Origin: Lepidodermella squamata
Taxonomy: Eukaryota > Animalia > Gastrotricha
NCBI GenBank assembly: GCA_047495785.1
Contig: JBLDXI010000054.1
Location: forward strand, 2,666,001-2,730,000
Reading direction: 5' to 3'
DNA length: 64,000 nt
The notes under the pieces are model-generated. The model ran no database searches and had not been told where the DNA came from. It saw only the letters and a list, made by a program, of their open reading frames with translations. A program made the position numbers and the translations under genes. This document shows, one piece after another, positions 1-23,840 of the stretch (within the stretch, counting starts at the first letter, position 1; each line of letters opens with the position of its first letter).

Positions 1-362
1 AACTTTTTGAGCCGCACACTGCACATAATAATTTTGAAAAATCCAGCTTAATATCGAGAGGAACAGGTTTTTCTAAATCCGGCCCAAAAACGGCCTCTTC
101 GCAATATTTCAGCCGATGAAATCGACATTTCGACCCGTCTTCTGTGCCACAGGTACAGGGTAGCTGCTTGCCGCGATTTCTCGATAAAAATTTCTGAAAA
201 GCAACAACAAATTAGGAATTAGATTAACATAAAAACGGTAATTCGTACCCGACACGCTTCACAGATTACATTATTGGACGGAGATGAATCATCTGCCGAT
301 TTATTGTCGTTACTCGCCAATAATGAGCACGCATAACAGTTTTGGCCCAAATGAGACATCAT
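1..362 (-). CDS. Two-DBD nuclear receptor, copy A (5' part; continues beyond the window start)
   Basis: Exon 1 MSHLGQNCYAC...VICEACR, then a GT-AG intron. Exon 2 KFLSRNRGKQLPCTCGTEDGSKCRFHRLKYC...IMCSVCGSK. Exon structure matches copies B-D. Confidence 0.85.
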
Positions 363-457
363 TAAAAATTCTATAACAAAATTAATTAATTAATTAAAAA
401 ACTATTTTATGCCATTTTACAAAATTTTAGAACCGTGAGCATTAAATTAATCTCAGA

Positions 458-2623
458 TCATGTTGAGATATTAAGCAGCTTTTGAGTGAATTCGGTTACC
501 AGTTGCGTATACAAAGGTCTCAATTCTGGAAATCGCGTCATTATCAAATTGAAAAAATCTTGAAATATCGTCGTTGCCCGCCGAAGTACAGGTAATAATT
601 GGTACAGCGAGGCTATTTTCGACTCGGCATCAGCCCCGTAATTTTTCAAAAAATCGTCAAAAATTGCATTTTCGTAACGGCGGCGCCATTTAGTAACAAC
701 ATCAACGCTTTGTAAATTTGGCAAACCTAAAACGAAAAAAAATCATAATTTTCCGAGAAATTTAATTATAGACAAATTACCGTTGTTAAATAGCAGTAAG
801 GCACATAGAATTGCGAATTCTCGTAAGTTGGTTATTACAGGCGACTGAGCGTTGCCGGCTTCGATCATGAAAGAGCGAAGTTGAGCTGCAAATTGCGGTA
901 GCTCGCTTTCACTGACCTCCCACGCCTCGCCCTCTAGAGAGAAGACGTTCGCTTTTTGATTCACAACATCAAACTGCAGCGACAGCTGAGCCACTATGAC
1001 CGGGAAAAGGCCTTGAGTGAATAACACAACACGGTCGGGAAATGAAATTTCTTGAAAGCCTGTTATAATAAAATACGATTAGTCGCTAATAGAAAAACAG
1101 AGAAAATATTTAAATAACCTGGTAGATATTGGAAAAAACCAGCTACGCATCTCACATACGTATCTGTGGCCCGAATTCTTATAGCTGTTGCTTCAGCTTT
1201 ACTCATATTAAAGCGAACCGGTTGCTCAACCTAAAAAATTCAAAAATGTAAGAATGCATAAATTAATAAAAGGGGTAAAAATTTGCGCCACTATAATTTG
1301 GTTCCAGCTCACTAAATTTATCGGTTTTTTTGCGATTTCCGAATATTTCCTTTCCTGTCCCTATTAGCACATCCAGGAAAATAATTTTAGGAAATTTGGC
1401 CATCGAATGGGGCTCACTTCGCCGGGTCCACCTGTTATATTTCATAATATTTTTGTATAATTTTGAAATTCCTTATAGCGATTTTCATAACTAAACGCAA
1501 ATAGCAATTTTTGCATGCATATAGTTGACCCTATAAAAAATCGATACCGGAAATCGATATCAGCACAGCGGACTGAAATCCAACGTTTAATTAGACCACT
1601 CTTCGTGCGAAGAGTGAGATCTATTGCCTTATAGGCTGGATAATAAAAATAATTGGGACGTGAAACTCGAAAAACTGCAATTTAGCGATGGAACCCTATA
1701 TTTAACGTGGGCCCTCAATAAAAAATTACCAGAGCTATTTCCGACAATTTTACAGCCGACTTGACTGCCTCGGCTACAACGTCTAGCTCGATAATAATTT
1801 CTGGGACGTTATAAATGACGCTTTCATTGCTAGCCGATACAATAACACCGCTGTCGACTGATGAGTTTTCAACTCGTTGATTTTCGATCGACGACGAGAT
1901 GGATTCATTTTCCAGCGAAGCCGCTGCTGCTTTTCTAACGATATCCGATCGCCGTTGCATGGAATGCCGGCCAACTGTGGCCTTATCGAAAGACATGCCA
2001 AGGGCGAGACATTTCGCAAATCGGCAGTTGCGGCATTTAAAGGCGCGCAATTATTGGTATTCGATTCGCATTCGTATTGATTTAAATAATCAGCGTTCGC
2101 CATCGAACGGCGGAAGAAGCTTTTACAAGCTTGGCAAGAGATCACGCCAAAGTGATACCCACTACCTAAAATTAAATAAATTCAATGAAAAGTTGAAAAA
2201 TGGTTAAATTATTTGTGGATCAGAAAATTCCACCTTAAAATTACTTTTTTGGCCGCAAATTTCACACGGCATTTCCGAAAAGTTGAGCCTGATATTTCTC
2301 GGGCGCATTCCACCGGCCGTATTGTCGCCGCCGATAGTGATCTCCTCACATTTTTGAAGCCGATGGAACCGGCATTTGAATTTGCGCTCATCATCGCCAC
2401 AACTGCATGGTAGCGTTTTACCTCGATTTCGCGCTAGAAATTTCTAAAAAGAAATTAAAAACATTTAATTAAATTTATTTAGCAAATGTTTTACCCGACA
2501 AGCTTCGCATAGACCTGGCGAAGGGTTGCTGCGGTTGACGAATTTTCCGGTTTCATTTTCGAATCCTGCGGCCGTGAAAAATTCGTTGCAGGCGTCGCAA
2601 CGAAACCGCGTGGATTTACTCAT
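458..2623 (-). CDS. Two-DBD nuclear receptor, copy B, with a 1-nt frameshift in DBD2 (pseudogene or homopolymer error)
   Basis: DBD1 CDAC...GLCEACR|KFLARNRGKTLPCSC...CRFHRLQKC. DBD2 CEICGQK|SSGYHFGVISCQACKSFFRR...CAPL/KCRNCRFAKC, with the frame change at ~2036-2041. LBD exons contain FFQYLP|GFQEISFPDRVVLF and a C-terminal helix LVTEFTQKLL. Confidence 0.85.
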
Positions 2624-2868
2624 CAATTTTCCATAAAATCTAAAACAAAAAAATTTAAATTGTTTAAACAAATAATTTAATCTCAAAAACGTTTAAACAG
2701 CACTTACACCGGTATAAAAAATCACTATAATAATACTGGTAAAGATTCAGTCAACAAGATTTTAAAAGTCGTGGTCAGAGTTACAAGAAAGCTCCATATA
2801 AAATTGCATTTTCAACAGCCAAGAAGATAAAAAATACGGAAATTCCGAGTTCACGATATTGCATCTTG

Positions 2869-4697
2869 TCAATTGATAGACGGATTTTTCATAAGTTGCT
2901 CAGTAAATTCAGTTGCTAATTTCGACCAAAACAGCTTACTCTCCGGCGATCGGGCCGAAATCGCGGCAAAAAGTGCCTGGAAAATTGTCGTAGCACGGCG
3001 TAAAATCGGCAACAAGCGATAAAAAGCTGCAATTTTCGTCTCCAATTTATGACCGTAATTTCTAGCAAAGTCTTCAAAAAGCGCATTTTCATATCGGCGT
3101 CGAATTTTATAAACAATTTCAGGATATTGAAGATTCGGAGTATCTAGATTAAAAAAATTAAATTGCTGCAATAAAAATAGATTTTTTCTCTCACTATTGT
3201 TGAATAGCAAAATTGCGCATAAAACTGAGAATTCGGCGAAACTCGCAATAGATTGAAATTGCGTATTTCCAACTTCGATCATGTAATCTCGAAGTTTGAC
3301 GGCGAATTCCGGCATTTGTTGGGCACCCATTTGAAAGGTTGTTTCATCCATTGCAAACATTTTCGGCCGCTGATTTTCAACGTCAAACTGAAGCGACATT
3401 TGAGCGGCCATTATCGGGTGAAAACCCTGCGTGAATAACAAAACTCTATCCGGCATAGCCAGTTCTTTAATACCTAGGATAAAAACATGTGAAAATTCGT
3501 AGAAAAAATGTAACTTGAGTAAATTTAAACAAATTTACCAGGTAGGTCATGGAAAAAGGCCGCGACGCTTCTCACAAAAATTTCCAAGGACTGAACTCGT
3601 AGAGCAGTAGATTCAGCCTTAGACATACCAGGTCGAATTTGCGTTTGGACCTGAAAAAAAGTTCATTTAAATTTTTCAGTGGAAATTTAAAAATTCAAAA
3701 TTTTACCAAATTATCTTGTTTACGAAAAAATTAACCTAGAATTTTATGGAAATTTATTCACATTTTTTCTAAAATTAAAAATGTCTAGAATTTTCGGGAA
3801 TATTTAGGAGAATTAATTTTTTTGGTGCTGGAATTATAAAAATACTTACCGAAGCTATATCAGCTAATTTCGCAGCCGCATGAGTAGCTGCCGATATCAA
3901 GTCGATTTCAACTGTAATTTCCGAATAACTACTTTCAGGGCCGTTTGAATGAACATTGCCCACACCAGAATCAGTTTCACTAGCATTTCGGCTCGAATCT
4001 TCATCCAACTGATAACTCGTCTCTTCATTCTCCGAATCATCTAAACCGCGATGTTGCGATTTGTTGATGATCGCAATTTTTCGCTGGGAATTATGCCGGC
4101 CGACAGTTGCTTTACTCAGCGACATGCCAGCACGGAGGCATTTCGCAAATCGGCACTGGCGGCATCGCAAATTCGCGCATTTCGCCGCATTCGATTTGCA
4201 CTTGTATTTCGTCCAAAAATCATCCAACATCGACCGGCGGAAAAAACTTTTACAACCCTGACACGAAATAGCGCCGAAATGATATCCGTTACCTAATATT
4301 AAAATTTTAATAAAAAATCATAAAAAAAAGATAAAATTACTTTCAAGACCGCAAATTTCGCACTGCATGAGTGAAAAATCCAGCTTAATTTCTTGAGGTT
4401 TCGGAGCTAACGGATCTTCACGCATTTCCTCGCAGTATTTCAGACGATGAAAACGGCATTTAGCCTTCTGATCGATATCGCAAGTGCAGGGTAAATCTTT
4501 TCCGCGATTTCGTGATAAAAATTTCTAAAAATAACTCGTTATAAAAATTCCACCTTAAAATTAATAAAATGTACCCGGCACGCTTCGCATAATCCGGCAG
4601 CGGAAACTAAGCCACTTGATTCGATGGGTGAGCTGCCATTTAATTTGCTGCAAACTCGACATTGATAGGCAGCATTTGATAAATTATCCGACGACAT
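2869..4697 (-). CDS. Two-DBD nuclear receptor, copy C
   Basis: DBD1 CRVC...GLCEACR|KFLSRNRGKDLPCTC...CRFHRLKYC. DBD2 CEICGLE|SNGYHFGAISCQGCKSFFRR...CRQCRFAKC. LBD signature FFHDLP|GIKELAMPDRVLLF. Confidence 0.9.
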
Positions 4698-4740
4698 AAT
4701 AAAAAAATCTACAAATAAAAAATTAAATTTAAATTTAAAA

Positions 4741-6379
4741 TCACGAAGCTTTGAGTAGCTCTTGCATGAAATCAAACGTCAATTTCGAAGTAATATCTCT
4801 AAATTCAGGATAAATCATTTTGATAGTAGCAAACAATTCTTGAAAAAAATTTGTTGCACGGCGTAATATTGGCAAGAGTTGATAGAAAGCTGCAGTTTTG
4901 ACCTCGGCCTCAATGCCGTGGTGCAATAAAAAATCATCACATATTGCTTGTTCGTAGCGACGACGAATTTTGAGCACAACATCAGCATTCTCAAGCCCAG
5001 GCGTGCCTGTTAAAAATGAGTCAGAACACAATTTAAATTAAAATTCATCGTCATCTCACAACTGTTGAAGAGCAACAAGACGCATAACACAGCGAACTCT
5101 CGAATGCTGCTAATAGCTTGGCATTGCGCGTTGCCGGTTTCGATCATATAAGACATGAGTTTTGAAGTCAATTGCGGCAGTTCGTCAACGCTGACTCGCC
5201 AAGCTTCGTCGTCCATCGAAAAGAGATTCGGTCGTTGATTAACCACATCGAAATGAAGTGATAATTGGGCTGCGATCACCGGGTAACAGCCTTGGGTAAA
5301 TAATGCAATTCTATCCTTCATGGTAATTTCCTTCACCCCTACAATAAATCGGTAGAAATTCCTAAAGAATTAAAAAAAATCGAATTCAAAATACCAGGTA
5401 GATCTTGAAAAAATGAAGCGACACATTGAAGATAAACTGATGTTGCCTCGTCGCGAATAGCTGCCGCTTCAGGAATAGTCATATGCGACCGCACAGATAC
5501 TTGAACCTATAATTAAAAAATTAAATTAATCTTGGATTTAAAAAAAATGATTACCGATGAAATGCCAGCTAATTTTGTTGCTGCAATGGCAGCGGCTTGA
5601 ATAATGTCATGATTGTTCACCGTCGAAAATTCGCTGAATTTTGGCTGAAAACTGCTCGAGTTCGAGGAGCCAAGTTCGCTTGGCGCTGATTCAACCGGTT
5701 TTTCAATAGCCTTTTTGACAATTTTGGCTCTTAGCTCCATATTATGCCGACCAACAGCGGCCTTGTCGGCGGACATACCAACTTGAAGGCATTTATTATA
5801 ACGGCATTTCCGGCATTTTAAAACTGAGCAATCGCTTGATTGATTGCATGCGTATTGCTTCCAAAATTCCTTCGCGATAGATCGACGAAAAAAACTTTTA
5901 CAGCCTTGGCATGCGATTGCACCGAAATGGTAACCATTGCCTATTTTTACAGCGTTAAAAACAAGGTCAAACCAAGGCGATGAAAAAAACAGACTTTTTC
6001 CACCACAGACTTCACATGACATCATGGAAAAATTCAGCTTCAAATTGCGAGGCCTGGTTTTTCCCGGATTTTCCCTGCTCAGATTTAAGGTAGATTCGCG
6101 GCATTTTAGCAGGCGGTGATAACGGCACTGAAGTTTTCGTTTGCTGCCGCAGCTGCATGTAAAATCTCTATCGCGATTTCTCGAATAAAATTTCTAGGCG
6201 ATAAAAAAAACCATTTAACCTAGAAAAATAGAAAAAATTGGAAAAATCACCCTGCAAGCCTCGCATAGACCAGGCGATGAGCTGACCAGAAATTTGCCAG
6301 GAATTTCTGACTTATTATCAGTTTTAAATAATTCGTTGCAAGCCTCGCAACATTTTGACCCGTCGGAAGACGAGGTCAT
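4741..6379 (-). CDS. Two-DBD nuclear receptor, copy D
   Basis: DBD1 CEAC...GLCEACR|KFYSRNRDRDFTCSC...CRYHRLLKC. DBD2 CEVCGGK|SNGYHFGAIACQGCKSFFRR...CRKCRYNKC. LBD FFQDLP|GVKEITMKDRIALF, with an AF-2-like end FDFMQELL. Confidence 0.9.
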
Positions 6380-7891
6380 TCTATAAAAAATTTAAATTTA
6401 AATAAATAGGACAGACCTAAAAAGAGCTGAAAAATAATCGGAAATTTAGATGATTTTCCGAAAATAGTACCGGCAGGGTAAAATGACAATTTTAACGATG
6501 AAGTTTTGTAGAAACTTGAAAGATATTTACCGCATATTCTGGTGAATATGTACCTTTGCATCGATGGCATATAAAATACTAGCGTTAAATAGAAAGCATC
6601 GAGCTTACACTGCGTAGAATATCGCATATAGTATAGTGAAGCCACGGTAGTGTTATTTATTGTAAAACGCGCTCTCGTATAAGCCCAGTACTACGGCTAG
6701 TACTGCCAAGTAATAGCAGAGCATTGGCAATAGTCCCTGAAAACAAGGCCACAATGCCGTAGAAGACATAAATTCATTCATCATCAGAGTATTGCGCGTA
6801 CTGAAAAGCCAGTTCAAGACTTGGGCGGAAAAACACAATTTACCACGATTTCTTCAATGACTTTTTTCGGTAATTATCTTCGATTCGGAAATGGGTTAAT
6901 TGCAGTAGGCACCCCTTTTTATTTGACAACCGCCGCCGTGCTGCATAGCACTGCATTACTAATAATAACGCAAGTGCCGCACGCAGATATGTAATAAAGA
7001 GAAATAACGCAGGCCCTATAATAATGACACGCTAGTAAAATTTTGTCGACATTGAGGAGCAAGGCTAAATTTTGATGTTAATTAGAATTAAAACCTCTCA
7101 CAGTCATGTACTGCGCTTTCAAAGCAAACGAGACTTCACGGTTCATCGGCGTGGTTGAAGAGATGATCATCATTAATGGCTTGCGACACTTTGTGCTAAT
7201 CAACACACCTCGTATAACGGCTAGCTTGATACAGTTATCTCAAAGCCGAATGAATAACTGGCTCGAAATCGTCTGGCTGAGATGCTTAAAAGCGGCAATT
7301 TTTTATTGAAAAATTGAAAAAATTAAATTGCCAAGATATGATGGCAAGGCATCGATATAATTTTTGTTATACAAAAATCCACCTTAATAATATTATTGTT
7401 TTGAAACGCACAAGGTCAATATAATTGTGAATTGCTTCTATCTTTTTTTCGAGTTCAGCAATCGTGTGCCGCTTGGTTTTAGTGGACGTGTGCGCAAGGA
7501 ATCGCGCGTCTTTTGTATTATTTTATTAGCTTCAATGAAACGAGAACAAATTAGTAGATTTGCAAAAAACCTCGGAGGCAAAATCACTGTGAGCGTAAAT
7601 AGGAAATTCAATTTTTTGCATCATCCTATCTGCGCTATATTCAGCGTAGCCCATCCCGATCGATTTATTTTTTATTTCAGCGATAAAAAATGGCTTTTCC
7701 AGTGGCTTTTCTCGGAAAAAAGGCGTGGTAAGAGATATTAAAATGGGCGGAAAACAGAGGAAGAGATATCTCATGGGAATGTTATCTGGGGCGAGAAGAG
7801 TTGTGCGGTATCTCAACCGCCCTTTGGAACTTCACTTACCACTTACCATGGTAGCTCTCTAGAAAATACTTAATAAAACCAACACTGATAA

Positions 7892-10432
7892 ATGGAGGAG
7901 ACACATGAAATTTCGGTAATTTCACGCTTAAAAAATCATGTATTTCAATCATAAATTTTATTTAAGGTGGATGAATTTGACTCGAACGCGAGTTTGTTGA
8001 GTGCTGCAGCTAGCGGAGATGTCGATGAGCTGAGGCAATTATTAATAGACGGCGCTGACCCGAATTCAGCTGATGAGCAGGGTGTCACAGCGTTGATGGT
8101 CTGCGCCAAAGAGGGACATGTCGAAGCGTTTCAACTGCTGCTTGAAAATGGCGCCGATGTAGCGGCGGAAGATGAGGACAAATGGACGGCGCTGATCTAC
8201 GCGGCGTACAACGGCGAACTGGCCTGCCTTGATCTAGCCATCCAAAACGGAGCTAATGTTAACGCTGTTGATGCTAAGGGCAAGTTGGCGCTGATGTCGG
8301 CGGTTCAAAACGAAACTTCGGCATGTGCTGCTAGAATCTTGGAACATTGCGACCAATGTTTGACGGCGAAAGATAATGACGGATGGACAGCTTTGTTCTA
8401 CGCGGCGATGGCTGGTTCTGTGCAAAACATCGATTTCCTAGTGGCTAATAGCCAAGATCCTAATGCTAAGGATAACAATGGCCAAAGCCCGCTGATGATC
8501 GCAGCACATGAGGGTCATGTCGAGGCGACTCTTTCATTGATCAAAAACGGCTCAGACCTTAATTTAACCGACTCTTTGGGGCAAACAGCTTTATTCTATG
8601 CAGTCACGGCTGGCAAGACTGAAGCCGCGGAAGTTCTGCTACAGAAAGGGATCAATTTAGAGGTTGTCGCAAATGACGGGAAAACTGCGTTGCTATGGGC
8701 TGTTCAGAACAATCACCTTGAAACGCTTGAGGTCCTGCTGAGCCATGGGGCAAGTATCCATGTTGCTGATAATGAAGGCTGGAATGCATTGCTTTACGCA
8801 GTTGGTTGTGGGCATTCGGCTATTGTCGATCGTTTATTGAAAGTTGAAGGTGTCCAACTTGATTCGGTAACTTCGGAAGGCGAAAGTGCTGTTACTATCG
8901 CAGTTTTGAACAAGCATTCCGAAATATTACGACAATTACTAGAACACGGGGCTGATCTTGAAATAGCAGACGAAAATGGCTTTACCCCGGTTTTCCATGC
9001 AGTAGCTAATAGCGATGAAGAAATGGTGCGAAATTTGCTAGAAAAGGGGGAAAACATTAACGCGAAATGCAACAATGGTCGAATTCCATTGATGTACGCC
9101 CTAGAAAACAGAAGCACGATGATTGATACCCTGTTAGACTACGGGAGCGATGTTAACACGACTGATTCAGAGGGCTTTACAGCTCTTCATTACGCTGTCC
9201 TTCATGGGAATGACGAGGTTATTAGAATTGTTCTGGAAAGCCAAGAAGACGCTTCAACAGAAGTTCTAATGAATTCAATTTCATCAGCCTTCCAGTTGAA
9301 AAGAGAAGATATAATTGAGAAGCTGGTGGCAAGTTTAGACGTGCATGCAAGGTTAGACTCTAAGAACGGAGCGACCCCTTTAATCTTCGCTGCTGCATCC
9401 GGTGATCTCGAAACAGTGGATCTATTGCTGAAAAACGGGGCTGACATACATGCGAAAGACCACGCAGGATTGACTGCGTTGATTAGGGCTGTTTTGAATG
9501 AGCACCTTGATGTTTCCATATATCTGCTCCATTCTGGCGCTGGCGTTGACGACGCTATGCCTGACGGGAAAACTCCGGTATTCATTGCATCAGATCTCGG
9601 TAACCTGGCGATGGTCGAACTTATGATTAAACATGGTGCCCAAGTAAACATAGCCCTGAATGGAAAGGGGGAGACGCCGTTGATAACCGCTGCATACCAT
9701 GGCTTTATCGACATCATGAAATTACTCTTGGCATCTGGAGCTGATCTTCAGCGAAGAGTTAATGGTTGGCAGGTGGTTCATTTCGCAGCATTCTCAGGTC
9801 AGTTGGAAGTTTTGCGGTATCTCCTTCAAATTCAACCGAATTTCCGCGAGGCTGTTGATTTGAATGACAATACAGCAGTGATGATCAGCGTATTTCGGGG
9901 CCACGTCGATTGCGTGAAACTTCTTTGCGATTTGGGGGCTAGCCTTGAGTGGCGCAACAAAGACGGTGCGACCTGCCTGATCCTAGCTATCAAATCTGGC
10001 AAGGTCGAAATGGTTAAACTTCTACTGGACCGTGGTGTTAGTATGACTGGAGATGCAATACACCACGCTGCATTTGTTGGCTCACCCCAAATTATCAGTT
10101 TCTTATTGCTGAACTGCGCATTTGTTAACACGAAGAACGTTGATGGAATGACTCCTCTCATGATCGCTTGCATGCAGGGCCACTCTGAAACAGCTCAACT
10201 TCTGATCGAGAACGGGGCTGATAAGTATGAGAAGAATAATAATGGGTTATCTGCTATTCAATTGGCGGCTTCCCGCGGCCACACAGAGACGGTTCGAACT
10301 CTGGTTGAGTGTGGCACGATTCGAGGGATGAAACGGGCGAAGAAATACGCTAAACAGAACGGTTACATTGAAACTGTGGAACTAATCAAGAAAAATAAGA
10401 AAACTTGTTTTACAGCTTGCAATATTTCATAG
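7892..10432 (+). CDS. Ankyrin-repeat protein (over 20 repeats) with a C-terminal polybasic region and CaaX motif
   Basis: Short exon 1 (MEETHEIS, 7892-7915), intron 7916-7966, then a long ORF of GxTALxxA/GxTPLxxA repeats ending KKNKKTCFTACNIS*. Confidence 0.93.
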
Positions 10433-10776: not shown

Positions 10777-13137
10777 ATGATGAAACTCTTCCTTGCCATA
10801 ACTTTCCTGCTGTCTTTCTTACCAAACAGTAACGCTACGACAAAGTCGATGCTGGCTTTTATTCCATTTACCAGCAAACATGACCTGGACGATGACGCCA
10901 TCTGTCGAGCTTCTATGGCTGTTGCCGTTGACTATACCAACAGAAAGATTAACCCAACCATTGTCAACGCAACATTTCTTTTCGAAGACACAGACCATCG
11001 GGAGACAATGAGTCGAATAATCGATTTTTATGAAAGAGGAGAGCACAAATCTTCATTTAACAAGAGATTCTTGATCGCCCCTTCGCGAGTCGTCAACGAT
11101 TATCCCTATTTCGAAACTTTGCTGAAAAATATCGACGTGCATGCGTACACAGCTGCGACGACTACCCACAATGAAAATTCATATCTCAGGGGTACCGGAC
11201 CTCCTGCTCACTTGGTCGCTGATTTTATCGTCGAGTTCGTGGTTAAAATTGGTCAGTGGTCAAAAGTTGCACTATTGAGAAGTGGAGGCGGCCTCGGATT
11301 GCTTGATAAGCTTCGGGAGCGCAACGTAACCGTAAGATGGTTTGCTGCTATCGAATTTCTTGAAGACTATGCCGAGGATGCATTTTTTGAAAGCAACCTT
11401 CGTGTGTTTGTAGTGGATGCTACTAGCATCACACCTTTGCTGCTAGAATTTATGTGCGAGTTTTTCACTAAACTCAGCAACTCAAGCAGACCTTTCGCTG
11501 TTGTACTTCCGTCTGCAATATTTTTTGATTCCGGACACCACGCAGTCTCAGACGATTCGCGATGCGATCTGAATGGGATGATGACTCGATTTACCGAGCG
11601 GATCTATTGGGTCGGGGAGAACATTTATGCTCAAAACGTGACCGTTAAACCGGAGATAGCAGCCTTCGATTCTGAGCTCGGTGAGAAAATAACTGGACTA
11701 GTTAGGGTAACATCGTACGACATTGTTCACCCTTATCAATGCCGCGATTTAATGATGAACGGTTTAAGATCGGCAGTGAAAGCAAACTTAGATTCTAGCT
11801 TCGATGCCCCGTTTTTCAATCAGCTTAACCTGGGAGTATTTCGATGGCTTCCCTCAGATGCAACCGAAACTCTGTTGCAAATAAATTTCTCGCAATGGCC
11901 GAGTGGTGTCACACTCAACAGGTCAATAGACTGGCAAGACACATCGCATTCCATCCCTAAAGATTTTCCCGATGTAGTCCTCTTCTACAAATCTTACGAC
12001 ATGCAAGACCGTGTTTTCGAAGTATCAGGTGGATTCATTATGGTTTCAGATCTGATTATGGCTTTACTGTATGTCATAAAATATCGACGTTCGGGAGATC
12101 AGAAAGCAGCTGACTTTGTCGCTCTTTTAGGCTGTATCTGCCTAAATCTATATATTCATTGCTCCTTGGAAATGGATCACCATCGCAGTGATTTTTTGTG
12201 CAAAGCAGGTTTCATATTCGCTTTCATTGGACTAGCATTCATTAATGGCTCGCTGACAGGGAGGATTTTCAGCGTTAGAAGACTGGTCATCAAACAGCAC
12301 ATGGACGATTTGAAGAATTCGCAACTCCAGAGGAAGATGCGAAAGAACAGGAGAGTCAATAAAGTTGCTTTACCGAATCGATTTCGCCTAATCGATGAGT
12401 CATTTCACACCGTTCAATCGTCTTCACTGACGGGCTCAAACAATACTGAAAATAGGTCAGCATTATCTCTGAGATCATCCCTCAAGCCGTCGCCTAGCCC
12501 TGGTTGGAAGAAAGCGCCGAGAAAAAGCACAATTAGCGCCAGTTCAATGGCCCGCTTCACACTAGTCGAGCCGCCTCAAGCCTCACCGATTGCTCCCCAA
12601 ATTAACGAAAAAGATGTCTTAATTGCTCTGCTTTTAGTTTCTCTTTTAAATGCTCTAATTCTAGCTGCTTGGTATTACTTGGAGCCGCCAACCCATTTGC
12701 ACTTCACAAATACTTCATTCGATGAAATGACGTATAAGCTCGAGACTGACACGTATTACTACACAGCGGAGGACATTTGTTACTCGGATAATCTTGGGGA
12801 GTGGTTACTAGGAATCAGCACGTTCCATGCGATTGTCCTACTTCTCGGGCTATCTTCCATCATGGCAATCAGGCGTAGTTTGATTTTCAAATCAATACCC
12901 AGTGTAGCGAGAGCCTCATACGCCGTCAAATATTGCTCAAGCTTGTTTGCTGGGATAATCCTGACACAACTAATCGCATTCACTAACGAGTATGGGAAAG
13001 CTATCCTTTGCATTTTGATACTTTTGTACACATCGCTTGCCAGCTGTGTGGTATTTTGGCCAACTTTAAGAAGAATAGCAGTCGTCTTTAAAGCGGTTTT
13101 TTGCAGTAGATCCGACATTTCTACGACAACCATTTAA
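10777..13137 (+). CDS. Class C GPCR-like receptor (GABA-B-type Venus flytrap plus 7TM), intronless
   Basis: Signal peptide, a periplasmic-binding-fold-like ectodomain (C..SMAVAVD..N, GQWSKVALL), seven hydrophobic segments, and Cys at TM3 and ECL2. Confidence 0.8.
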   Translation: MMKLFLAITFLLSFLPNSNATTKSMLAFIPFTSKHDLDDDAICRASMAVAVDYTNRKINPTIVNATFLFEDTDHRETMSRIIDFYERGEHKSSFNKRFLIAPSRVVNDYPYFETLLKNIDVHAYTAATTTHNENSYLRGTGPPAHLVADFIVEFVVKIGQWSKVALLRSGGGLGLLDKLRERNVTVRWFAAIEFLEDYAEDAFFESNLRVFVVDATSITPLLLEFMCEFFTKLSNSSRPFAVVLPSAIFFDSGHHAVSDDSRCDLNGMMTRFTERIYWVGENIYAQNVTVKPEIAAFDSELGEKITGLVRVTSYDIVHPYQCRDLMMNGLRSAVKANLDSSFDAPFFNQLNLGVFRWLPSDATETLLQINFSQWPSGVTLNRSIDWQDTSHSIPKDFPDVVLFYKSYDMQDRVFEVSGGFIMVSDLIMALLYVIKYRRSGDQKAADFVALLGCICLNLYIHCSLEMDHHRSDFLCKAGFIFAFIGLAFINGSLTGRIFSVRRLVIKQHMDDLKNSQLQRKMRKNRRVNKVALPNRFRLIDESFHTVQSSSLTGSNNTENRSALSLRSSLKPSPSPGWKKAPRKSTISASSMARFTLVEPPQASPIAPQINEKDVLIALLLVSLLNALILAAWYYLEPPTHLHFTNTSFDEMTYKLETDTYYYTAEDICYSDNLGEWLLGISTFHAIVLLLGLSSIMAIRRSLIFKSIPSVARASYAVKYCSSLFAGIILTQLIAFTNEYGKAILCILILLYTSLASCVVFWPTLRRIAVVFKAVFCSRSDISTTTI

Positions 13138-13539: not shown

Positions 13540-15909
13540 ATGAATCTGAATTTGACTTTTGCTTTACTGTATTTACTCTCAAATATCGTTGGTTCTAGGC
13601 CAACGAAAGTCAAAACATCATCGCTACTGGCGTTCGTGCCATACACCGGCTTGACTGATATGGATGACGATGCGATTTGCGAAGCCTCAATGAAGGTCGC
13701 CGTGGATTCTGTAAACGAGCGATCAGCACCACTCAACTTGAATGCGACAATTTTGTTTGAAGCGAGCGATCTGAAAGATTCGGTGGCAGAAATAGTCAAT
13801 TTTTACAGCAATTCTCCTTTCGATAAAAACCCGTTGATAGCACCGTCCAGGCTTGTAAACGACTATCGCTATTTTGAAGCCCTACTTCGGAATTTGAACG
13901 TTACAGCCTACACTACCGCTACTACTAAGCACAACAGCAATTCTAGCCTTCGAGGAACAGGTCCGCCAGCTGATCTGGTCGCCGAGCTCATGGTCGAATT
14001 TGTCGTCAAAATAGGCCAATGGTCTCAGGTTGCGTTGTTGCGAAGTGGGAGTGGCCTTGGTTTATTAGAACGGTTCCGAGAGCGGAATGTCCACGTTAAA
14101 TGGTTTGCTGCAGTTGAATATTTGGAAGAAAATGCGCAGGCGTCGTTTTTCGCGAGCAATCTTCGAATAGTTGTGATCGATGCAACCAGCATTACCCCGT
14201 TACTTCTGGGGTTTATGTGTGAATTCTTTATGAATATTAGCGACTCTCGTAAGCCTTACGTTGTAGTCCTGCCGTCCGCAATTTACATCGACCCTGAGCA
14301 AGGTTTGGTGTCGAATGAAAGTTCGTGCAATTTCAATTCAATGATGGTGAAATTTTCATCGAGAATCTTCTGGGTCGGAGAAAATATCTACGCGCAAAAT
14401 TCAGCGAACTCGAAAGAAGTTTCATCTTTTGACATATCATTGGGCGAGAAAATTACTGGCCTTGACCGTGTCACATCCTATGACATGGTTCATCCTTACC
14501 AATGCCGAGATTTGATGATGGCTGGTCTTCGTTTTACGTTGCGAGCAAACTATAATATGAGTTTCGATGTCCCAACGCTGAATCAGCAGAACCTAGGAGT
14601 TTTTCAGTGGGGTCATCCAGACTCCCCTTCAACAGTTCTGCAAATCAATGTAACACAATGGCCGGAAAAAATCTCTTTAAATTGGTCTTTGTTGACCACA
14701 AACGTCAATCTACAGATCCAGAGAGATTTCCCTGCAGTACTTTTGAATCACAGGACTTATGATCCTTCAGATCGCGTCCTCGAGTCAGCTGCAGGGATAG
14801 TAATAATTATCGCATCTGTCATTGGTTTGTCACACTTGACCAAATTAGGGCGCAAATGTGAACAGCAGCTTGTTGACATAGCTCTTCTTCTCGGCTGTGT
14901 ATTCTTCAATTTTTATGTTTTCTTATCACTCGAAATGGATCACCATAAGAGCGATTTCCTTTGCAAAGCGGGATTCGTTTTCGTTTTTACAGGTCTATCA
15001 TTGATCAACGGAACACTTCTTGGCAAGATTCTCAGTGTACGTAGCCTTGTTATCAGGCAGAATATGGACGATTTGAAAAGGGCTCTCCTCAGAAAAATGA
15101 GATCGAAATCGCGAAAACTAAAAAAGGCTGAAAGTAAAGCGAAACTGTTCAACGCTGGATCTTCCCTGCAATCAGGAATGTCATCACGAGGAATATCCCG
15201 CAGAACGTCAGTTGCTCCCGTTTCATCTCGCAGATCATCCTTAATGCCGCCATTCGTGGTTGGATTAACCAAATCGATACGAAAAAGTACGATTAGTTCC
15301 AACTCCGTGAATCCCGATTTCATCTTGACTGTCCCTCCACAAAACACACCGCCCGTTGCCAAATCAAGTAGCTTCAGCGCTATTGCCACGGTGATATGCA
15401 TAACAATTTTAAATTCTTGCATCATGGCTGCATGGTATTACGTGGAACCGCCCACTCATTTAAACTTCAAGAATGCATCCTTCGATGACATGACTTATGA
15501 CCTCGAGAAGGACACATATTTCTTCACGGAGGTAGATATTTGCTACTCAGAAAATCTGGACAGTCTGCTGTTAGGCGTAAGCATTCTCCATTCCGTCGTC
15601 CTACTTGTCGCAGTCGCATCGTTCATGTCTATCCGGCGAAGTGAGATCGCGAAGTCTATGCCCAGCGTAGGAAGGGCGGCTAATGCACTTATATACTGTT
15701 CGAGTCTATTCGCTTGCATGTTGTTGACGCAACTAGTAACTTTTGACACTGAGACCGGAAAAGCCATTCTATGCGTGCTCATCATCCTGTACTCTTCTCT
15801 AGCTTGTTGTCTCGTTTCCTGGCCAACCATCAAAACGGCATTTTCATATTTTCGCAGTCGTTTATATATCAGACATTCGCAAAATTCATCACTGACAAAT
15901 AATATCTGA
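13540..15909 (+). CDS. Class C GPCR-like receptor, tandem paralogue of 10777-13137
   Basis: Shares many identical blocks (LRGTGPPA, DATSITPLLL, HPYQCRDLMM, SLEMDHH.SDFLCKAGF). Confidence 0.8.
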   Translation: MNLNLTFALLYLLSNIVGSRPTKVKTSSLLAFVPYTGLTDMDDDAICEASMKVAVDSVNERSAPLNLNATILFEASDLKDSVAEIVNFYSNSPFDKNPLIAPSRLVNDYRYFEALLRNLNVTAYTTATTKHNSNSSLRGTGPPADLVAELMVEFVVKIGQWSQVALLRSGSGLGLLERFRERNVHVKWFAAVEYLEENAQASFFASNLRIVVIDATSITPLLLGFMCEFFMNISDSRKPYVVVLPSAIYIDPEQGLVSNESSCNFNSMMVKFSSRIFWVGENIYAQNSANSKEVSSFDISLGEKITGLDRVTSYDMVHPYQCRDLMMAGLRFTLRANYNMSFDVPTLNQQNLGVFQWGHPDSPSTVLQINVTQWPEKISLNWSLLTTNVNLQIQRDFPAVLLNHRTYDPSDRVLESAAGIVIIIASVIGLSHLTKLGRKCEQQLVDIALLLGCVFFNFYVFLSLEMDHHKSDFLCKAGFVFVFTGLSLINGTLLGKILSVRSLVIRQNMDDLKRALLRKMRSKSRKLKKAESKAKLFNAGSSLQSGMSSRGISRRTSVAPVSSRRSSLMPPFVVGLTKSIRKSTISSNSVNPDFILTVPPQNTPPVAKSSSFSAIATVICITILNSCIMAAWYYVEPPTHLNFKNASFDDMTYDLEKDTYFFTEVDICYSENLDSLLLGVSILHSVVLLVAVASFMSIRRSEIAKSMPSVGRAANALIYCSSLFACMLLTQLVTFDTETGKAILCVLIILYSSLACCLVSWPTIKTAFSYFRSRLYIRHSQNSSLTNNI

Positions 15910-18233: not shown

Positions 18234-18686
18234 ATGCTCGATAAACCTAAGCCGGTTGTTAGCTTATCTCTGCTACCATTCCATCTGTCGATCTGCATCA
18301 ACAGCCTGGACGAAGCTCGTCGATTCTACGGAGAAATTCTCGGCCTGGAAGAGCGCCGAGCAACTGAGACCTCGATTCACTTCGACGTTTACGGCTCACA
18401 GCTGACCCTGCATGCCGTCGATGGTTACAGCGCGTTGAATATCCAACGAGAAGTCGACGCTGAAGACGTACCAGTCCCGCATTTCGGATTCGCTCTGCCG
18501 GATGCTGATTCTTTCTATCAAATCGCCCAGCGGCTTAGAGAAGCTGGTGTTAAATTCGTCAAAGAGCCGGCGAAACGATTCTTGGGGAAGAAGCATGAAC
18601 AGTACGTGCTTTTCGTCCTGGACCCGGCTGGTAACGGAATCGAGATCAAAGCTTTCATTCATGCTGCACCAGGCGAATGGCTGTGA
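18234..18686 (+). CDS. VOC/glyoxalase family protein of the bacterial predicted extradiol-dioxygenase type
   Basis: PFHLSI, ARRFYGEILG, VDAEDVPVPHFG, EP..RF.G...EQ...FVLDPAGNGIEIKAF; His/His/Glu metal ligands retained; intronless. Confidence 0.9.
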   Translation: MLDKPKPVVSLSLLPFHLSICINSLDEARRFYGEILGLEERRATETSIHFDVYGSQLTLHAVDGYSALNIQREVDAEDVPVPHFGFALPDADSFYQIAQRLREAGVKFVKEPAKRFLGKKHEQYVLFVLDPAGNGIEIKAFIHAAPGEWL

Positions 18687-18877: not shown

Positions 18878-21093
18878 ATGAATCGCTTAGCGTGGAAGCT
18901 ATTGGCTATATCCGTTTGTCTTGCTGCGATCTCAATCGCCCTTGCGCCAAGAATACCGAGAGTTGGTGAAAAATGGCCACCGAGGCAGAAATTTATGCTG
19001 CGATTAGCTGCTGTGGCAATCGTTGTAGCACTATCGGGCCTTTCTCTGACATCATTCATCATAGCCTGGCTACCAGTTTCGCGTCACCACGGCATTATCT
19101 CCGCAATCGCCCATTTTTTCAATCTTCTGATGCTGCGAATCATCGGACCAGGGTGTTGTAGCTTGCTGGACGAAGCAATTGAAAATCCTAGAAAAACTCA
19201 AGAGGAGTTGCTTAAAAAGATTCTGATGGACAATGCATTCACAGTTTACGGCAACGAAAGGAATTTCGCAGCGATGATCAATCGTGAAGATTTCAAAAGA
19301 ATGCACCCACTTACCGACTACGAATGGTTCAGGCCATACATTGAACGAATCATTGATAGAGGTCAGTGAATTCGAAATTCGAATATAACTAATTGATTTG
19401 TTTGGGTTCGCCAATTTCAGGTGAGCAGAATGTGCTAACGCGTGACCCAGTCATTAGACTCAACGTAACCTCGGGAACTGGCGGGAAATCGAAAATGATA
19501 CCAAGCACTGCTGAGTATTTCGCCCATGCTCAAAGGTTAGAATACCTAAACACTTTTTCGTTAAGCTGGATGTTTGATAACGCAGGAATTTCTACATCCC
19601 CTATTATTACCACCTCGGCCAAACAAAACGCGCACCATTTTTGGCTCCGTTGAAACAGTCTTTCATGACCTTCGTTCCCCGTTGGCGGTTCACGGGTGAG
19701 AAATTGCCAATCGGCCCTCTTTCAGCGAATACTCGCAAACACCAGAAAATGTGGAAGTACAGCCGAACGCTGCCTGTCGAGGCTGAGGCATACATGAGTG
19801 AACCAGCTCAATGTTACCTGCACTGGCTCTTTGCACTCATGGACCCAGAGATGACCCGAATAGATGGCGCGTTTGCTGGCACTGTTTTGGCATCGATTGA
19901 ACAGCTTAGATTGAAATGGCGGAAATTGGTCGTCGATATTAAGAATGGGAAGCTGTCACGTGACGAGGACATACCCTCATCAGTAATTGATCGCATAGAG
20001 AAGTCAGGGAAACTGTTTGCGGACGAACATCGTGCGGAACAATTGAATCGCGAGTTCAGCAAAGGATTTGAAGGCGTTATGGGTCGTATCTGGCCAAGAA
20101 TGAGTACGTAGATTTTTCAGTAATTTTCTTGAACTTCATTCTATTTCTAGACGTTTTGGTCTGCTTTACAACTGGTACGCAATGTATTTATCGCGAAAGG
20201 CTTCAATGGTTTTGCGGGCCAAGCATCGACATCGTTTCGCCATTTTACACGGCCAGTGAGGGCGCTTTCGGTCTAAACCTAGAGCTCTCAAGTGGGGAAC
20301 AGCTCTTCACCCTACAACCTCAAATGACATTCATGGAATTCATCCCCGAGGCTAATATCGATGACGAAGAGCCTTGTACGTTGTTCATGGATCAAATTCA
20401 ATGTGGCAGGCGGTATGAATTGGTGATTACCAGTATGTTGGGCCTATATCGGTACCGCATGGGAGATATAGCTGAGGTTGTTCGTCTACGGCACTGTACA
20501 CCCGTTGTCCGATTTTGCGGCCGAGTTGGCAGCATCCTTGATTTGAGAGGCGAGAAAACTACCGAGGTAAGATCTGCCTAAGGATAAGTTCAAGATTTGC
20601 TGAAATATCGCTCTTTAGGAAATGATTTTAACAGCCCTATTAGCAAGTGTCCCGAAATGGAAAGGTAGCGGTTATATGCGAGGTTACACAACAACAGAAG
20701 GCGTCAGTCTGTCCAAAGTTATCGAACCCATTTACCAAGGGGAATTCGGTCTCCACTACGTCCTATTTGTCGAGGTTGAAGGCATCGAAAGGCGATTAAC
20801 TCACGACGAAGTGACAGTTTTCGATGAAAACCTGTCGAAAGTTAGCTATCCATATCACTCATTCCGTAAAAAGTTGTCCATCGTTCGACCAAAGGTATAA
20901 CATTCTTAGTACAAAGGCTTTGATTAATTCTGCTGTTTTTTTGTTTCAGATTTTTATTGTTAGGCCTGGAACATTCATAGCTATGAAAGAATTCACGCTT
21001 CGAAAAACTCAAGGAGCCCCATCACAGTACAAAACTCCGAAATACGTTACGGACGAAGAACGCCTTGCTTTCCTTGTTAATTCTTCATACTAA
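18878..21093 (+). CDS. GH3 domain-containing protein (acyl-adenylate-forming fold) with N-terminal TM segments, GHDC-like
   Basis: HPLTDYEWFRPYIERI, TSGTGGKSKMIP, FYTASEG, YELVIT...GLYRYRMGD and SQYKTPK motifs. Five short introns restore the reading frame. Confidence 0.92.
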
Positions 21094-23398: not shown

Positions 23399-23840
23399 TT
23401 TTAATTCGAAAAGGGTAAAGGATATGCTTTTCGGAAAAGGAGGAGCATGAATTCGTTTAAGACGGTTTTCCTCCCAGCTAATTAGAGATCGTAACCTGAT
23501 ATCAAGCTCACCCAGTAGCGCATAGACCGTATTAGCGCCTATGTACGTTGTGTATTCACCCCGCACGCTTGTCGTTACGCACGTTCCCATGCCGTTATTT
23601 CATGAGCTGCTGATAGAGAGGTGCTTAAAACTGGCTTAACTGGCTGATAACAAGTATTCAGTTGGCGGTTATCTTTCGATCACATTCACTTACGTGTTAA
23701 GTTCTTTCCCGGCTCTGTCTGGGGGAAGAGTAAATTAATACCTTCCCAGTTGCCAGACTATCGTCTCCTCCTTCAGGCGGTTGTCGGTGGGGGTAGTCGG
23801 TGGGGAGCGATATTGGAAGAGATTGTTTCTGATGTTCAAA

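What the first reader, a model, noticed from the sequence alone, without database searches (positions are those of the whole stretch)
1..6379. Tandem array of two-DBD nuclear receptors with a remodelled first DBD
Seen: at least four paralogues carry an extra N-terminal DBD that the ORF track misses because introns split it. Finger 1 is CxxC-x(~21-25)-CEAC with P-box CEACRK. Finger 2 is conserved as CxC-x(7-8)-CR[FY]H-RL.[KY]C, so the D-box is collapsed to one residue and His replaces the last Cys ligand. DBD2 has P-box CQ[GA]CKS and a shortened second finger. Known: flatworm 2DBD receptors have a first P-box CEACKK, and canonical fingers are Cx2Cx13Cx2C and Cx5Cx9Cx2C. Inference: a lineage-specific receptor subfamily with a C3H zinc module retained under selection.
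Basis: partly seen in the sequence, partly recalled or inferred. Interest (0 to 1): 0.82.

Follow-up and report, generated by a model that had tools for sequence, protein, structure and literature searches.

The report
Two-DBD nuclear receptors, remodelled first DBD
The window's left end holds four tandem, expressed genes for hormone-receptor-type transcription factors that carry an extra, strongly remodelled zinc module in front of the normal DNA-binding domain. This is a real and apparently undescribed offshoot of the rare "two-DBD" receptor class, but its zinc and DNA binding are untested.

Summary
On the minus strand of 1-6379 lie three complete six-exon genes (A 4741-6379, B 2869-4697, C 458-2623) and the first two exons of a fourth (D, cut by the window start).

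After splicing, each encodes:
- DBD1: CxxC-x20..26-CEACRKF[LY]xRNR-...-CxC-x7/8-CR[FY]HRLxxC.
- A linker with a [KR]L[DN]FS motif.
- DBD2: a Pfam zf-C4 domain with P-box CQ[GA]CKS and second finger Cx5-6Cx4Cx2C.
- A divergent ligand-binding domain (LBD).

cDNA-like contigs of a public run skip every predicted intron shown, including intron 1 of A and C. The DBD1 exons are therefore in the mRNA.

A DBD1 profile matches the first DBD of canonical 2DBD receptors (hhalign score 42.9; shuffles reach at most 14.1), and His aligns with the eighth zinc Cys. The best database matches include 2DBD receptors of bdelloid rotifers and an acanthocephalan. None of the top 150 hits has the CxC..CxxH pattern.

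A syntenic metagenomic relative has CEACKK with CxC-x7-CxxC, so the D-box collapse looks older than the Cys-to-His change. Selection is purifying.

Verdict: a new variant of the known 2DBD-NR (NR7) kind. Zinc and DNA binding are inferred only. Copy C is frameshifted in this genome. The scan already reported this array on adjoining DNA.

The parts
4741..6379 (-). Gene A, complete, 6 exons, 456 aa: DBD1 - linker - DBD2 - hinge - LBD
   Evidence: Model. All five introns are skipped by X1 cDNA-like contigs (6193>6251, 5939>5994, 5504>5553, 5337>5394, 5005>5059).
6251..6379 (-). Gene A exon 1: start codon and DBD1 finger 1 (CEAC-x24-CEACR)
   Evidence: Joined to exon 2 in X1.
5995..6193 (-). Gene A exon 2: end of the DBD1 recognition helix (KFYSRNR), finger 2 (CSC-x7-CRYH-RLLKC), linker (..LKLNFS..), and first CxxC of DBD2
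   Evidence: An AF2 model of the equivalent exon-2 peptide of gene B (not of A itself) gives helices at KFLSRN and from the Cys-x2-His onward.
5555..5940 (-). Gene A exon 3: rest of DBD2 (P-box CQGCKS, FFRRS, finger 2 Cx5Cx4Cx2C) and hinge
   Evidence: Pfam zf-C4 E 2.3e-16.
4741..5506 (-). Gene A exons 4-6: divergent ligand-binding domain
   Evidence: An HMM of the A/B/C C-terminal regions hits NR LBDs: P0153 91 bits, 2DBD-NR P0061 45 bits, Rev-erb-type about 28-33 bits. Pfam Hormone_recep is not detected on single-exon pieces.
2869..4697 (-). Gene B, complete, 6 exons, 471 aa. DBD1 is CRVC-x20-CEACRKFLSRNR..CTC-x7-CRFH-RLKYC. DBD2 has P-box CQGCKS.
   Evidence: Introns 2-5 are skipped in X1. 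The intron 1 joint is not among the rows shown. 19 synonymous against 3 non-synonymous differences to X1.
458..2623 (-). Gene C, 6 exons. DBD1 is CDAC-x26-CEACRKFLARNR..CSC-x8-CRFH-RLQKC. DBD2 has P-box CQACKS. It carries a 1-nt frameshift in this genome.
   Evidence: Introns 2-5 are skipped in X1, and intron 1 is shown by an 11-nt loose end identical to the exon 1 end.
2035..2036 (-). Frameshift site in gene C (one base missing in an A run inside DBD2 finger 2)
   Evidence: X1 has a T inserted behind 2035 and X2 does not (table 4).
4..362 (-). Gene D, first two exons only (window edge). DBD1 is CYAC-x21-CEACRKFLSRNR..CTC-x7-CRFH-RLKYC, followed by the linker and the first CxxC of DBD2.
   Evidence: Not covered by the laid stretch.

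Best explanation
These are tandemly duplicated, transcribed genes of a lineage-specific offshoot of the two-DBD nuclear receptors (2DBD-NR, NR7). The organism is a small-intron invertebrate, probably of the rotifer/acanthocephalan lineage.

Each protein has the architecture DBD1 - conserved linker - DBD2 - hinge - LBD.

DBD2 is a recognisable but modified zf-C4 domain. It has Gln instead of Glu at the first P-box position, and its second-finger loop is cut from 9 to 4 residues. It is the likely main DNA reader.

DBD1 keeps the four Cys of zinc site I and the recognition helix with the 2DBD-type P-box (CEAC[R]K F-x-x-R). Its finger-1 loop has expanded to 20-26 variable residues. Its second zinc module is reduced to a minimal knuckle plus helix (CxC-x7/8-C-x2-H), with His in the place of the eighth Cys and no D-box.

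Inferred mechanism, not shown: DBD1 still folds around two zinc ions (C4 and C3H) and provides a second, D-box-independent DNA contact next to DBD2. The receptor would then read a bipartite site without DBD1-mediated dimerisation. The array diversifies by birth-and-death duplication.

Shown here: gene structure, splicing into one mRNA, homology of DBD1 to canonical first DBDs, purifying selection, and absence from the searched protein collections and literature.

Inferred only: zinc ligation by His, DNA binding by DBD1, and any ligand.
For: - Gene models with consensus GT..AG introns.
- X1 contigs skip the predicted introns while X2 DNA contigs run through them. The loose end at 2444 equals the exon 1 end of C.
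- Pfam zf-C4 on DBD2.
- DBD1 profile against the canonical 2DBD first-DBD profile: hhalign probability 92.9, score 42.9, with all eight ligand positions aligned and H on Cys8. 150 column-shuffled controls give mean 3.9 and maximum 14.1.
- An HMM of canonical first DBDs scores the DBD1s at 6.6-12.6 bits and the CEACKK relative at 16.8 bits. It scores them higher than the generic DBD HMM does.
- HMMER against 1.84 billion representatives: many of the best 150 hits are canonical CEACKK 2DBD-NRs, including Pomphorhynchus, Rotaria and Adineta proteins of 466-471 aa. None has CxC..CxxH.
- The exon-2 profile against PDB sequences: 16 of 17 weak hits are NR DBDs, aligned on finger II.
- AF2 of the exon-2 peptide gives the expected helices (mean pLDDT 72). 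All 39 weak Foldseek hits are NR DBDs.
- Relative P0144/L001 has CKGC-x15-CEACKK..CSC-x7-CRIC. It lies head-to-head with an ankyrin gene that is colinear with the window's ankyrin gene (34% identity, E 6e-140), so the loci are syntenic.
- Selection.
- LBD.
Against: - No zinc, DNA-binding or structural data exist. The full spliced DBD1 could not be folded here.
- Pfam does not detect DBD1. Its scores against canonical DBD HMMs are far below any database-level threshold.
- The finger-1 loop has lost the conserved G-x-H-Y-G hairpin and is variable and low in complexity, as expected of a decaying module.
- The DBD2 tree is an unresolved polytomy. A clade with second DBDs of 2DBD-NRs (p-AU 0.83) and a clade with NR1 (p-AU 0.67) are both acceptable.
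- Only four copies could be examined, one is frameshifted, and the organism is not identified.
Confidence: 0.75

Rival explanations
1. DBD1 is a relic of the first DBD that no longer binds DNA. It would be kept as a small zinc-stabilised structural, protein-interaction or nuclear-localisation module, or as an autoinhibitory lid on DBD2, while DBD2 alone reads DNA.
For: - The finger-1 loop is expanded to 20-26 variable residues and the GxHYG hairpin is lost.
- The D-box is lost and finger II is shortened. Pfam is blind to the module.
- Single-DBD relatives that keep only the linker motif exist (the L001 gene at 7246 and P0153). The family therefore tolerates loss of DBD1.
- No DNA binding by any 2DBD-NR first DBD is cited in the papers read.
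Against: - The recognition helix is the best-conserved part of DBD1. CEACRKF-x-x-RNR is invariant or conservative in all four copies at 48-58% overall DBD1 identity with saturated dS.
- Every Cys and His ligand is kept.
- P-box residues would not need conservation in a purely structural role.
Confidence: 0.3
2. The His is not a zinc ligand. Zinc site II would be formed by Cys only (CxC, the Cys before R[FY]H, and the invariant Cys four residues after the His). That makes it a C4 site with shifted register and an incidental His.
For: - A fifth candidate ligand (HRLxxC) is invariant in all four copies and in the relative.
- The relative has Cys at the His position, showing that the position can change.
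- The alternative register seen in the PDB alignment shows that residue-by-residue homology is uncertain.
Against: - In canonical DBDs the equivalent ninth Cys is conserved but is not a ligand (established NR DBD structures; my knowledge).
- The His sits exactly where Cys8 aligns, at the start of the predicted helix.
- Cys-to-His exchange at a ligand position has a precedent in NR finger II: the CHC2 motif of flatworm HR96b.
Confidence: 0.3
3. The N-terminal module is not derived from the 2DBD-NR first DBD. It would be an independently acquired or duplicated zinc finger placed in front of an NR1-like receptor.
For: The DBD2 phylogeny cannot exclude an NR1 affinity. Nematode two-DBD receptors are thought to be separate and highly divergent.
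Against: - CEAC[KR]K is the signature first-DBD P-box of 2DBD-NRs, and it is exact in the syntenic relative.
- The DBD1 profile aligns end to end with canonical first DBDs.
- The hydrophobic linker motif just before DBD2 resembles that of the rotifer and acanthocephalan 2DBD-NRs among the hits.
- The best full-library hits are 2DBD-NRs.
Confidence: 0.07
4. Annotation artefact: the upstream Cys-rich exons belong to separate short transcripts or are untranslated, and the receptors start at DBD2.
For: The ORF list alone shows only separate short ORFs.
Against: cDNA-like contigs join exon 1 to exon 2 in A and C, in frame. The reading frame is open from the ATG through all six exons in A and B. The same exon 1/exon 2 split is present in the metagenomic relative.
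Confidence: 0.02

Closest known systems
2DBD-NR group A (NR7A) of Syndermata: bdelloid rotifer and acanthocephalan proteins such as P0021 (Rotaria sp. Silwood1), P0022 (Adineta vaga) and P0008 (Pomphorhynchus laevis)
   Same: - Architecture of two DBDs, hinge and LBD in about 460-470 aa.
- A CEAC-type first P-box followed by K-F.
- A second DBD followed by FFRRS.
- A hydrophobic motif in the inter-DBD linker just before DBD2.
- They are the best named matches in the full-library search.
   Different: - Canonical members have Cx2Cx13Cx2C and Cx5Cx9Cx2C in both DBDs and a P-P module of CEACKK-CEGCKG or CEACKG, with 4-6 genes per rotifer species.
- Here DBD1 is Cx2C-x20..26-Cx2C plus CxC-x7/8-Cx2H.
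- The P-P module here is CEACRK-CQ[GA]CKS.
- DBD2 finger II has a 4-residue loop.
- The genes sit in a tandem array.
Unnamed metagenomic relatives P0144 (locus L001) and P0153
   Same: - Same exon 1/exon 2 split and the CxC-x7 second finger in DBD1.
- Same linker motif ([KR]-x-[DN]-F-S..C) and a short DBD2 second-finger loop.
- A related LBD (91 bits).
- The same head-to-head neighbourhood with a colinear 813-821 aa ankyrin gene.
   Different: - P0144 keeps CEACKK and Cys, not His, at ligand 8, and its finger-1 loop is x15.
- Its neighbour gene and P0153 have no DBD1 in the sequence held. P0153's contig is only 2858 bp and was not inspected.
- Identity is only about 31-40%.
CHC2 second zinc finger of parasitic flatworm HR96b (Wu and LoVerde 2021, PMC8363021)
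   Same: A natural, conserved Cys-to-His replacement at a ligand position of NR zinc finger II.
   Different: - There the His replaces the second Cys of finger II (C-X6-C... written CHC2), in a single-DBD NR1J receptor with otherwise normal spacing.
- Here the His is at the fourth position, in the first DBD of a two-DBD receptor with a collapsed D-box.
- The 2023 review states that CHC2 occurs in no 2DBD-NR.
Nematode two-DBD receptors (2DBD-NRC; for example Aphelenchus avenae 'NHR-1 d', P0010/P0011) and nematode NHR expansions
   Same: Lineage-specific, rapidly diverging receptors with variable P-boxes. Genes are in tandem with about 50-nt introns and short intergenic spacers.
   Different: - The A. 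avenae proteins have two canonical, mutually similar DBDs that cluster together apart from this family.
- They have no CEAC[KR]K first P-box and no CxC or His.

Membership tests
Nuclear receptor superfamily | zf-C4 DNA-binding domain | tested here: met
   Pfam PF00105 on the DBD2 exons of A (E 2.3e-16, 60 bits) and B (E 4.7e-14), against a cut-off of 21.1 bits.
Nuclear receptor superfamily | C-terminal ligand-binding domain of the NR fold | tested here: met
   An HMM of the A/B/C C-terminal 236-239 aa hits NR LBD-containing proteins (P0153 91 bits; 2DBD-NR P0061 45 bits; Rev-erb-type 28-33 bits). Pfam PF00104 is not detected on single-exon pieces. The fold was not modelled.
2DBD-NR (NR7) | Two DBDs in tandem plus one LBD in a single polypeptide | tested here: met
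   Open frames run through six exons. cDNA-like contigs join the DBD1 exons to the rest. DBD1 is homologous to canonical first DBDs.
2DBD-NR (NR7) | First-DBD P-box CEACKK (group A) or CLPCKS/CEACKS (group B) | tested here: inconclusive
   The P-box here is CEACRK in all four copies, a conservative K-to-R change. It is exactly CEACKK in the syntenic relative L001. Definition.
2DBD-NR (NR7) | Second-DBD P-box CEGCKG, CEACKG or CEGCKK followed by FFRR | tested here: not met
   The P-box here is CQGCKS or CQACKS followed by FFRRS. No CQ[GA]CKS P-box occurs among the roughly 470 NR proteins fetched.
2DBD-NR (NR7) | Canonical zinc spacing Cx2Cx13Cx2C and Cx5Cx9Cx2C in both DBDs (stated for most members) | tested here: not met
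   DBD1 is Cx2C-x20..26-Cx2C and CxC-x7/8-Cx2H. DBD2 finger II is Cx5-6Cx4Cx2C. Among fetched NRs the (5,9) geometry dominates (316 cases) and (1,7) is absent.
2DBD-NR (NR7) | Phylogenetic placement of the second DBD within the 2DBD-NR clade | tested here: inconclusive
   In the quick IQ-TREE of 118 DBDs these sequences lie in the second-DBD/NR1 half (SH-aLRT 99) in a polytomy. AU tests accept both a clade with 2DBD second DBDs (p 0.83, lnL +26 over the free tree) and a clade with NR1 (p 0.67, lnL +10).
CHC2-type NR finger (flatworm HR96b) | His replacing the second Cys of finger II in an HR96b orthologue | tested here: not met
   The His here aligns with the fourth ligand (Cys8), and the protein is not HR96-like.

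The most novel reading that the evidence does not exclude
The compact CxC-x7-Cx2H module would be a functional new type of nuclear-receptor zinc module. DBD1 would still bind two zinc ions and DNA but without a D-box, so these receptors would read bipartite sites as monomers through two different DBDs. The family, reported elsewhere in this scan as at least 41 tandem genes, would be a new NR7 group whose expansion parallels the nematode NHR radiation.
Probability: 0.35. Interest if true: 0.7.

Novelty: new variant of a known kind. Interest (0 to 1): 0.55.

Why it matters
Two-DBD nuclear receptors are a rare and functionally almost unstudied class. No DNA target or ligand is established, and published counts are a few genes per species.

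This locus matters for three reasons:
- The class has given rise to an expressed, selectively maintained tandem family.
- The first DBD has been rebuilt: an expanded finger I loop, loss of the D-box, and Cys-to-His at a ligand position.
- An intermediate form (CEACKK, CxC, CxxC) in a syntenic relative gives an order of events.

It therefore offers natural variants for asking what the first DBD of 2DBD receptors does, and how far the otherwise highly conserved NR zinc scaffold can be reduced. For a nuclear-receptor specialist it is a notable new subfamily. It does not change the general picture of lineage-specific receptor expansions.

Tried and rejected
1. Pfam on single exons. DBD1 pieces and LBD pieces give no hit. 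This is uninformative because the domains are split by introns.

2. Word-index protein search with the 226-aa read-through ORF. Only two weak hits, because the length window excludes roughly 460-aa proteins.

3. Profile search (A1). It found only P0144 and P0153 as family members, and otherwise generic NR1 receptors.

4. Metagenome pattern scan with KCRFHRL[KQ] and KFL[SA]RNRGK. The one 'relative' (L002) is a 62% GC bacterial contig with a chance match in a non-coding frame. I rejected it.

5. Organism identification. A copine fragment gives only about 32% identity to vertebrate copines, and the Atlas taxa are uninformative. The organism stays unidentified. 'Probably a rotifer' comes from other agents' notes plus my finding that the nearest named 2DBD-NRs are from Syndermata.

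6. Supplement search of the 2DBD review for CEACRK, CRFHRL, CRYHRL and FHRL. No occurrences.

7. Foldseek of the exon-2 peptide model. Nothing is significant (best E 2.4), though all 39 weak hits are NR DBDs.

8. Folding of the complete spliced DBD1-DBD2 or the whole protein. This was left out. Only the contiguous exon-2 peptide alignment was folded.

9. The third AU test (these sequences with first DBDs) was not finished.


Full report
**What is there.**
The left 6.4 kb of the window is AT-rich (GC 0.37-0.40). On the minus strand it carries a series of short ORFs with nuclear-receptor motifs. I joined them through GT..AG introns of 48-79 nt, plus one of 199 and one of 499. This gives three complete six-exon genes and the first two exons of a fourth, which is cut by the window start:
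- A: 4741-6379, 456 aa.
- B: 2869-4697, 471 aa.
- C: 458-2623.
- D: 4-362.

All four genes have the same exon plan:
- Exon 1 ends exactly after CEACR.
- Exon 2 starts with K-F and ends one base into a codon inside the first finger of the second DBD.
- Exon 3 carries the rest of that DBD and the hinge.
- Exons 4-6 carry the C-terminal domain.

**The observation.**
After splicing, the N-terminal module reads CxxC-x20..26-CEACRKF[LY]xRNR-(5 residues)-CxC-x7/8-CR[FY]H-RLxxC in all four copies.

The second DBD is Cx2Cx13Cx2C with P-box CQGCKS (A, B) or CQACKS (C), followed by FFRRS. Its second finger is Cx5-6-C-x4-C-x2-C instead of Cx5Cx9Cx2C. Pfam recognises it as zf-C4 (E 2e-16 and 5e-14).

A six-frame motif scan of the whole window finds the CR[FYW]HR[LIM] and CEAC[RK] strings nowhere else. 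The corrections are:
- The finger-1 loop spans 20-26 residues.
- The count is three complete copies plus one truncated copy.
- Copy C has a one-base frameshift at 2035/2036, inside the second finger of DBD2.

**Transcription and splicing.**
Two public runs hold the stretch. X2 is DNA-like: its contigs run through the introns and agree with the window. X1 comes from an organism about 97% identical.

X1 gives contigs that skip the predicted introns with CT..AC ends on the plus strand, which is GT..AG on the gene strand. Specifically:
- All five introns of A, including intron 1 (6193>6251).
- Introns 2-5 of B.
- Introns 2-5 of C.

For C, the contig that ends at 2444 continues with 11 letters identical to the end of exon 1 (2496-2506).

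These forms are absent from X2, so X1 behaves as cDNA, although its record only guesses 'RNA'.

X1 also has the extra base at the frameshift site of C. Copy C is thus intact in that organism and broken, or mis-called in both assembly and contigs, in this one.

**Is the N-terminal module a nuclear-receptor DBD?**
Pfam sees nothing in the separate exons. An HMM built from 51 canonical first DBDs scores the spliced modules at only 6.6-12.6 bits.

Profile against profile, however, the five-sequence DBD1 alignment aligns end to end with the canonical first DBD of 2DBD receptors. hhalign gives probability 92.9 and score 42.9. 150 column-shuffled controls give mean 3.9 and maximum 14.1.

In that alignment the two CxxC pairs of finger I match, CEAC matches CEAC, and the His lies on the eighth zinc Cys (C-x2-C-R-[FYL]-x-K-C against C-R-[FY]-H-R-L-x-x-C).

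Further support comes from the exon-2 peptides:
- A profile searched against all PDB sequences returns 17 weak hits (E 0.08-6), of which 16 are NR DBDs aligned on finger II.
- An AF2 model of the exon-2 peptide (mean pLDDT 72) has a helix at KFLSRN and a helix starting at the C-x2-H, as in helix 3 of NR DBDs.
- All 39 weak Foldseek hits of that model are NR DBDs, none significant.

The PDB alignment uses a different register. It places the first Cys of CxC on canonical Cys6 with the canonical x9 spacing. So 'D-box collapsed to one residue' and 'Cys5 plus D-box deleted, new Cys at +2' cannot be told apart from sequence alone.

**Relatives.**
HMMER of the exon 2-3 region against 1.84 billion cluster representatives gives no hit below 1e-30. 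Many of the best 150 hits are canonical CEACKK 2DBD receptors. The named hits of similar size are from Pomphorhynchus laevis, Rotaria sp. and Adineta vaga. None of the 150 has the CxC..CxxH pattern.

One hit, P0144, aligns from the first residue of the query. It comes from a 22-kb metagenome scaffold (L001), where an upstream exon supplies CKGC-x15-CEACK. The spliced module there is CEACKK-FYTRN..CSC-x7-CRIC. That is the canonical 2DBD P-box and the collapsed CxC, but with Cys rather than His.

This scaffold is syntenic with the window. The receptor genes lie head to head with an 813-aa ankyrin gene that is colinear over its whole length with the window's 821-aa ankyrin gene at 7967-10432 (34% identity, E 6e-140).

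The gene next to the ankyrin gene in L001 (checked upstream) and P0153 as predicted keep the linker motif and DBD2 but show no DBD1. P0153's contig is only 2858 bp and I did not inspect its upstream DNA.

Reading these together, the CxC contraction is older than the Cys-to-His change, and the family can lose DBD1.

A word-index profile search and a peptide-pattern scan of JGI metagenomes added no further members.

**Selection.**
The four copies are 48-58% identical in DBD1, 61-68% in DBD2 and 49-54% in the C-terminal domain. Synonymous sites are saturated (pS 0.74-0.84), while pN is 0.28-0.39 in DBD1 and 0.18-0.23 in DBD2.

All Cys, the His and the helix CEACRKF-x-x-RNR are invariant or conservative. 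The finger-1 loop and the hinge are free to vary.

Among the differences between X1 and the window that the tool listed, 29 are synonymous and 8 non-synonymous in B and C. Only 40 of 155 differences were shown.

**The rest of the protein.**
An HMM of the three C-terminal regions finds NR ligand-binding domains in the fetched proteins. It scores 91 bits on P0153, which carries precomputed PF00104. It scores 45 bits on a flatworm-size 2DBD receptor and about 30 bits on Rev-erb-type receptors.

A tree of 118 DBDs puts the DBD2s in the second-DBD/NR1 half (SH-aLRT 99), but in a polytomy. AU tests accept both a clade with the second DBDs of 2DBD receptors (p 0.83) and one with NR1 (p 0.67).

Descent from NR7 therefore rests on the architecture, the first P-box, the profile match and the best-hit list, not on the tree.

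**Comparison with the literature.**
Wu and LoVerde (2023, PMC10497141) make the following statements:
- They define the P-P modules CEACKK-CEGCKG (group A), CLPCKS-CEGCKK and CEACKS-CEGCKG (group B), and 'highly variable' (nematode group C).
- They report 4-6 genes per rotifer species and at most seven in any species.
- They state that most 2DBD-NRs have C-X5-C D-boxes in both DBDs.
- They state that the His-containing CHC2 finger of flatworm HR96b is found in no 2DBD-NR.

Their text and five supplementary files contain none of the strings CEACRK, CRFHRL, CRYHRL or FHRL. The CHC2 paper (PMC8363021) shows that Cys-to-His at a ligand position of finger II has a precedent, but at another position and in a single-DBD receptor. 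A search for newer 2DBD/NR7 papers found nothing relevant.

**How it most likely works.**
*Shown:* a transcribed, spliced, selectively maintained two-DBD receptor family with a rebuilt first DBD.

*Inferred:* DBD2 is the main DNA reader, with altered specificity (Gln at the first P-box position, short finger II). DBD1 keeps zinc site I and the recognition helix, and so probably still contacts DNA. Its second zinc module is a minimal knuckle-plus-helix ligated by three Cys and the His. Without a D-box it cannot use the usual DBD dimer interface, so a bipartite, monomer-type reading by DBD1+DBD2 is the simplest model.

Odds as I see them:
- About 0.6 that the His is a ligand.
- About 0.45 that DBD1 binds DNA specifically.

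The main rival is a non-DNA-binding relic kept for structure or interaction.

**Context and limits.**
Other notes of this scan report that the array continues to the left for at least 41 genes and that the genome is probably a rotifer's. I could not check either, because the DNA is outside my window. My only support is that the nearest named 2DBD receptors are from Syndermata. The scan has thus already found this array on adjoining DNA. What this report adds is the anatomy, splicing evidence, homology test and intermediate relative for the remodelled first DBD.

Noticed in passing
window 2035-2036 (gene C): There is a one-base frameshift in an A run inside DBD2 finger II of copy C. The DNA-like run X2 agrees with the window, while the cDNA-like run X1 of a roughly 97% identical organism has the extra base and an open frame. 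This is either a very recent pseudogene or a strain difference.
   Followed up: partly
window 4698-4740, 2624-2868, 363-457 and 6380-6400: The spacers between stop and next ATG are very short (43, 245 and 95 nt). Each ATG is preceded within 1-27 nt by an unpaired polypyrimidine-AG acceptor. This is operon-like packing suggestive of spliced-leader trans-splicing. No leader sequence was seen in the rows shown.
   Followed up: partly
window 7967-10432 (+) and L001 3794-6238 (-): An intronless 821-aa ankyrin-repeat gene lies head to head with the receptor array. It is colinear (34% identity, including the C-terminal tail) with an 813-aa ankyrin gene placed in the same way next to receptor genes on a metagenome scaffold, so synteny is conserved at the array border.
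   Followed up: yes
window 21140-23590 (-), 26308-28605 (-), 42423-44702 (+): Three intronless ORFs of about 760-816 aa encode class C GPCRs (ANF_receptor plus 7tm_3). The first and third are clearly paralogous. This looks like a local expansion.
   Followed up: partly
window 10777-13137 (+) and 13540-15909 (+): Two adjacent intronless ORFs of 786 and 789 aa have no Pfam hit at E 0.001.
   Followed up: partly
window 18234-18686 (+): A single-exon 150-aa glyoxalase/VOC-superfamily ORF (Pfam E 3e-15) lies next to a GH3-domain gene (19641-20581). I did not test whether the VOC gene is of foreign origin.
   Followed up: no
window 38405-40864 (+): An 819-aa ORF carries long Thr/Pro-rich mucin-like repeats (TTTPTPPTT...IE units).
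   Followed up: no
L001 7246-8605 (+): The receptor gene nearest the ankyrin gene in the metagenomic relative keeps the linker motif (RIDFSKLPC), DBD2 and LBD, but no DBD1 exons were found in the 600 nt upstream. It is a single-DBD member of the same family. P0153 looks similar as predicted, but its upstream DNA was not inspected.
   Followed up: partly
window 3143-3197 (gene B intron 5): X1 shows two junction forms, 3143>3195 and 3143>3197 with TG between. This is probably a sequence difference at the acceptor in the X1 organism rather than alternative splicing.
   Followed up: no
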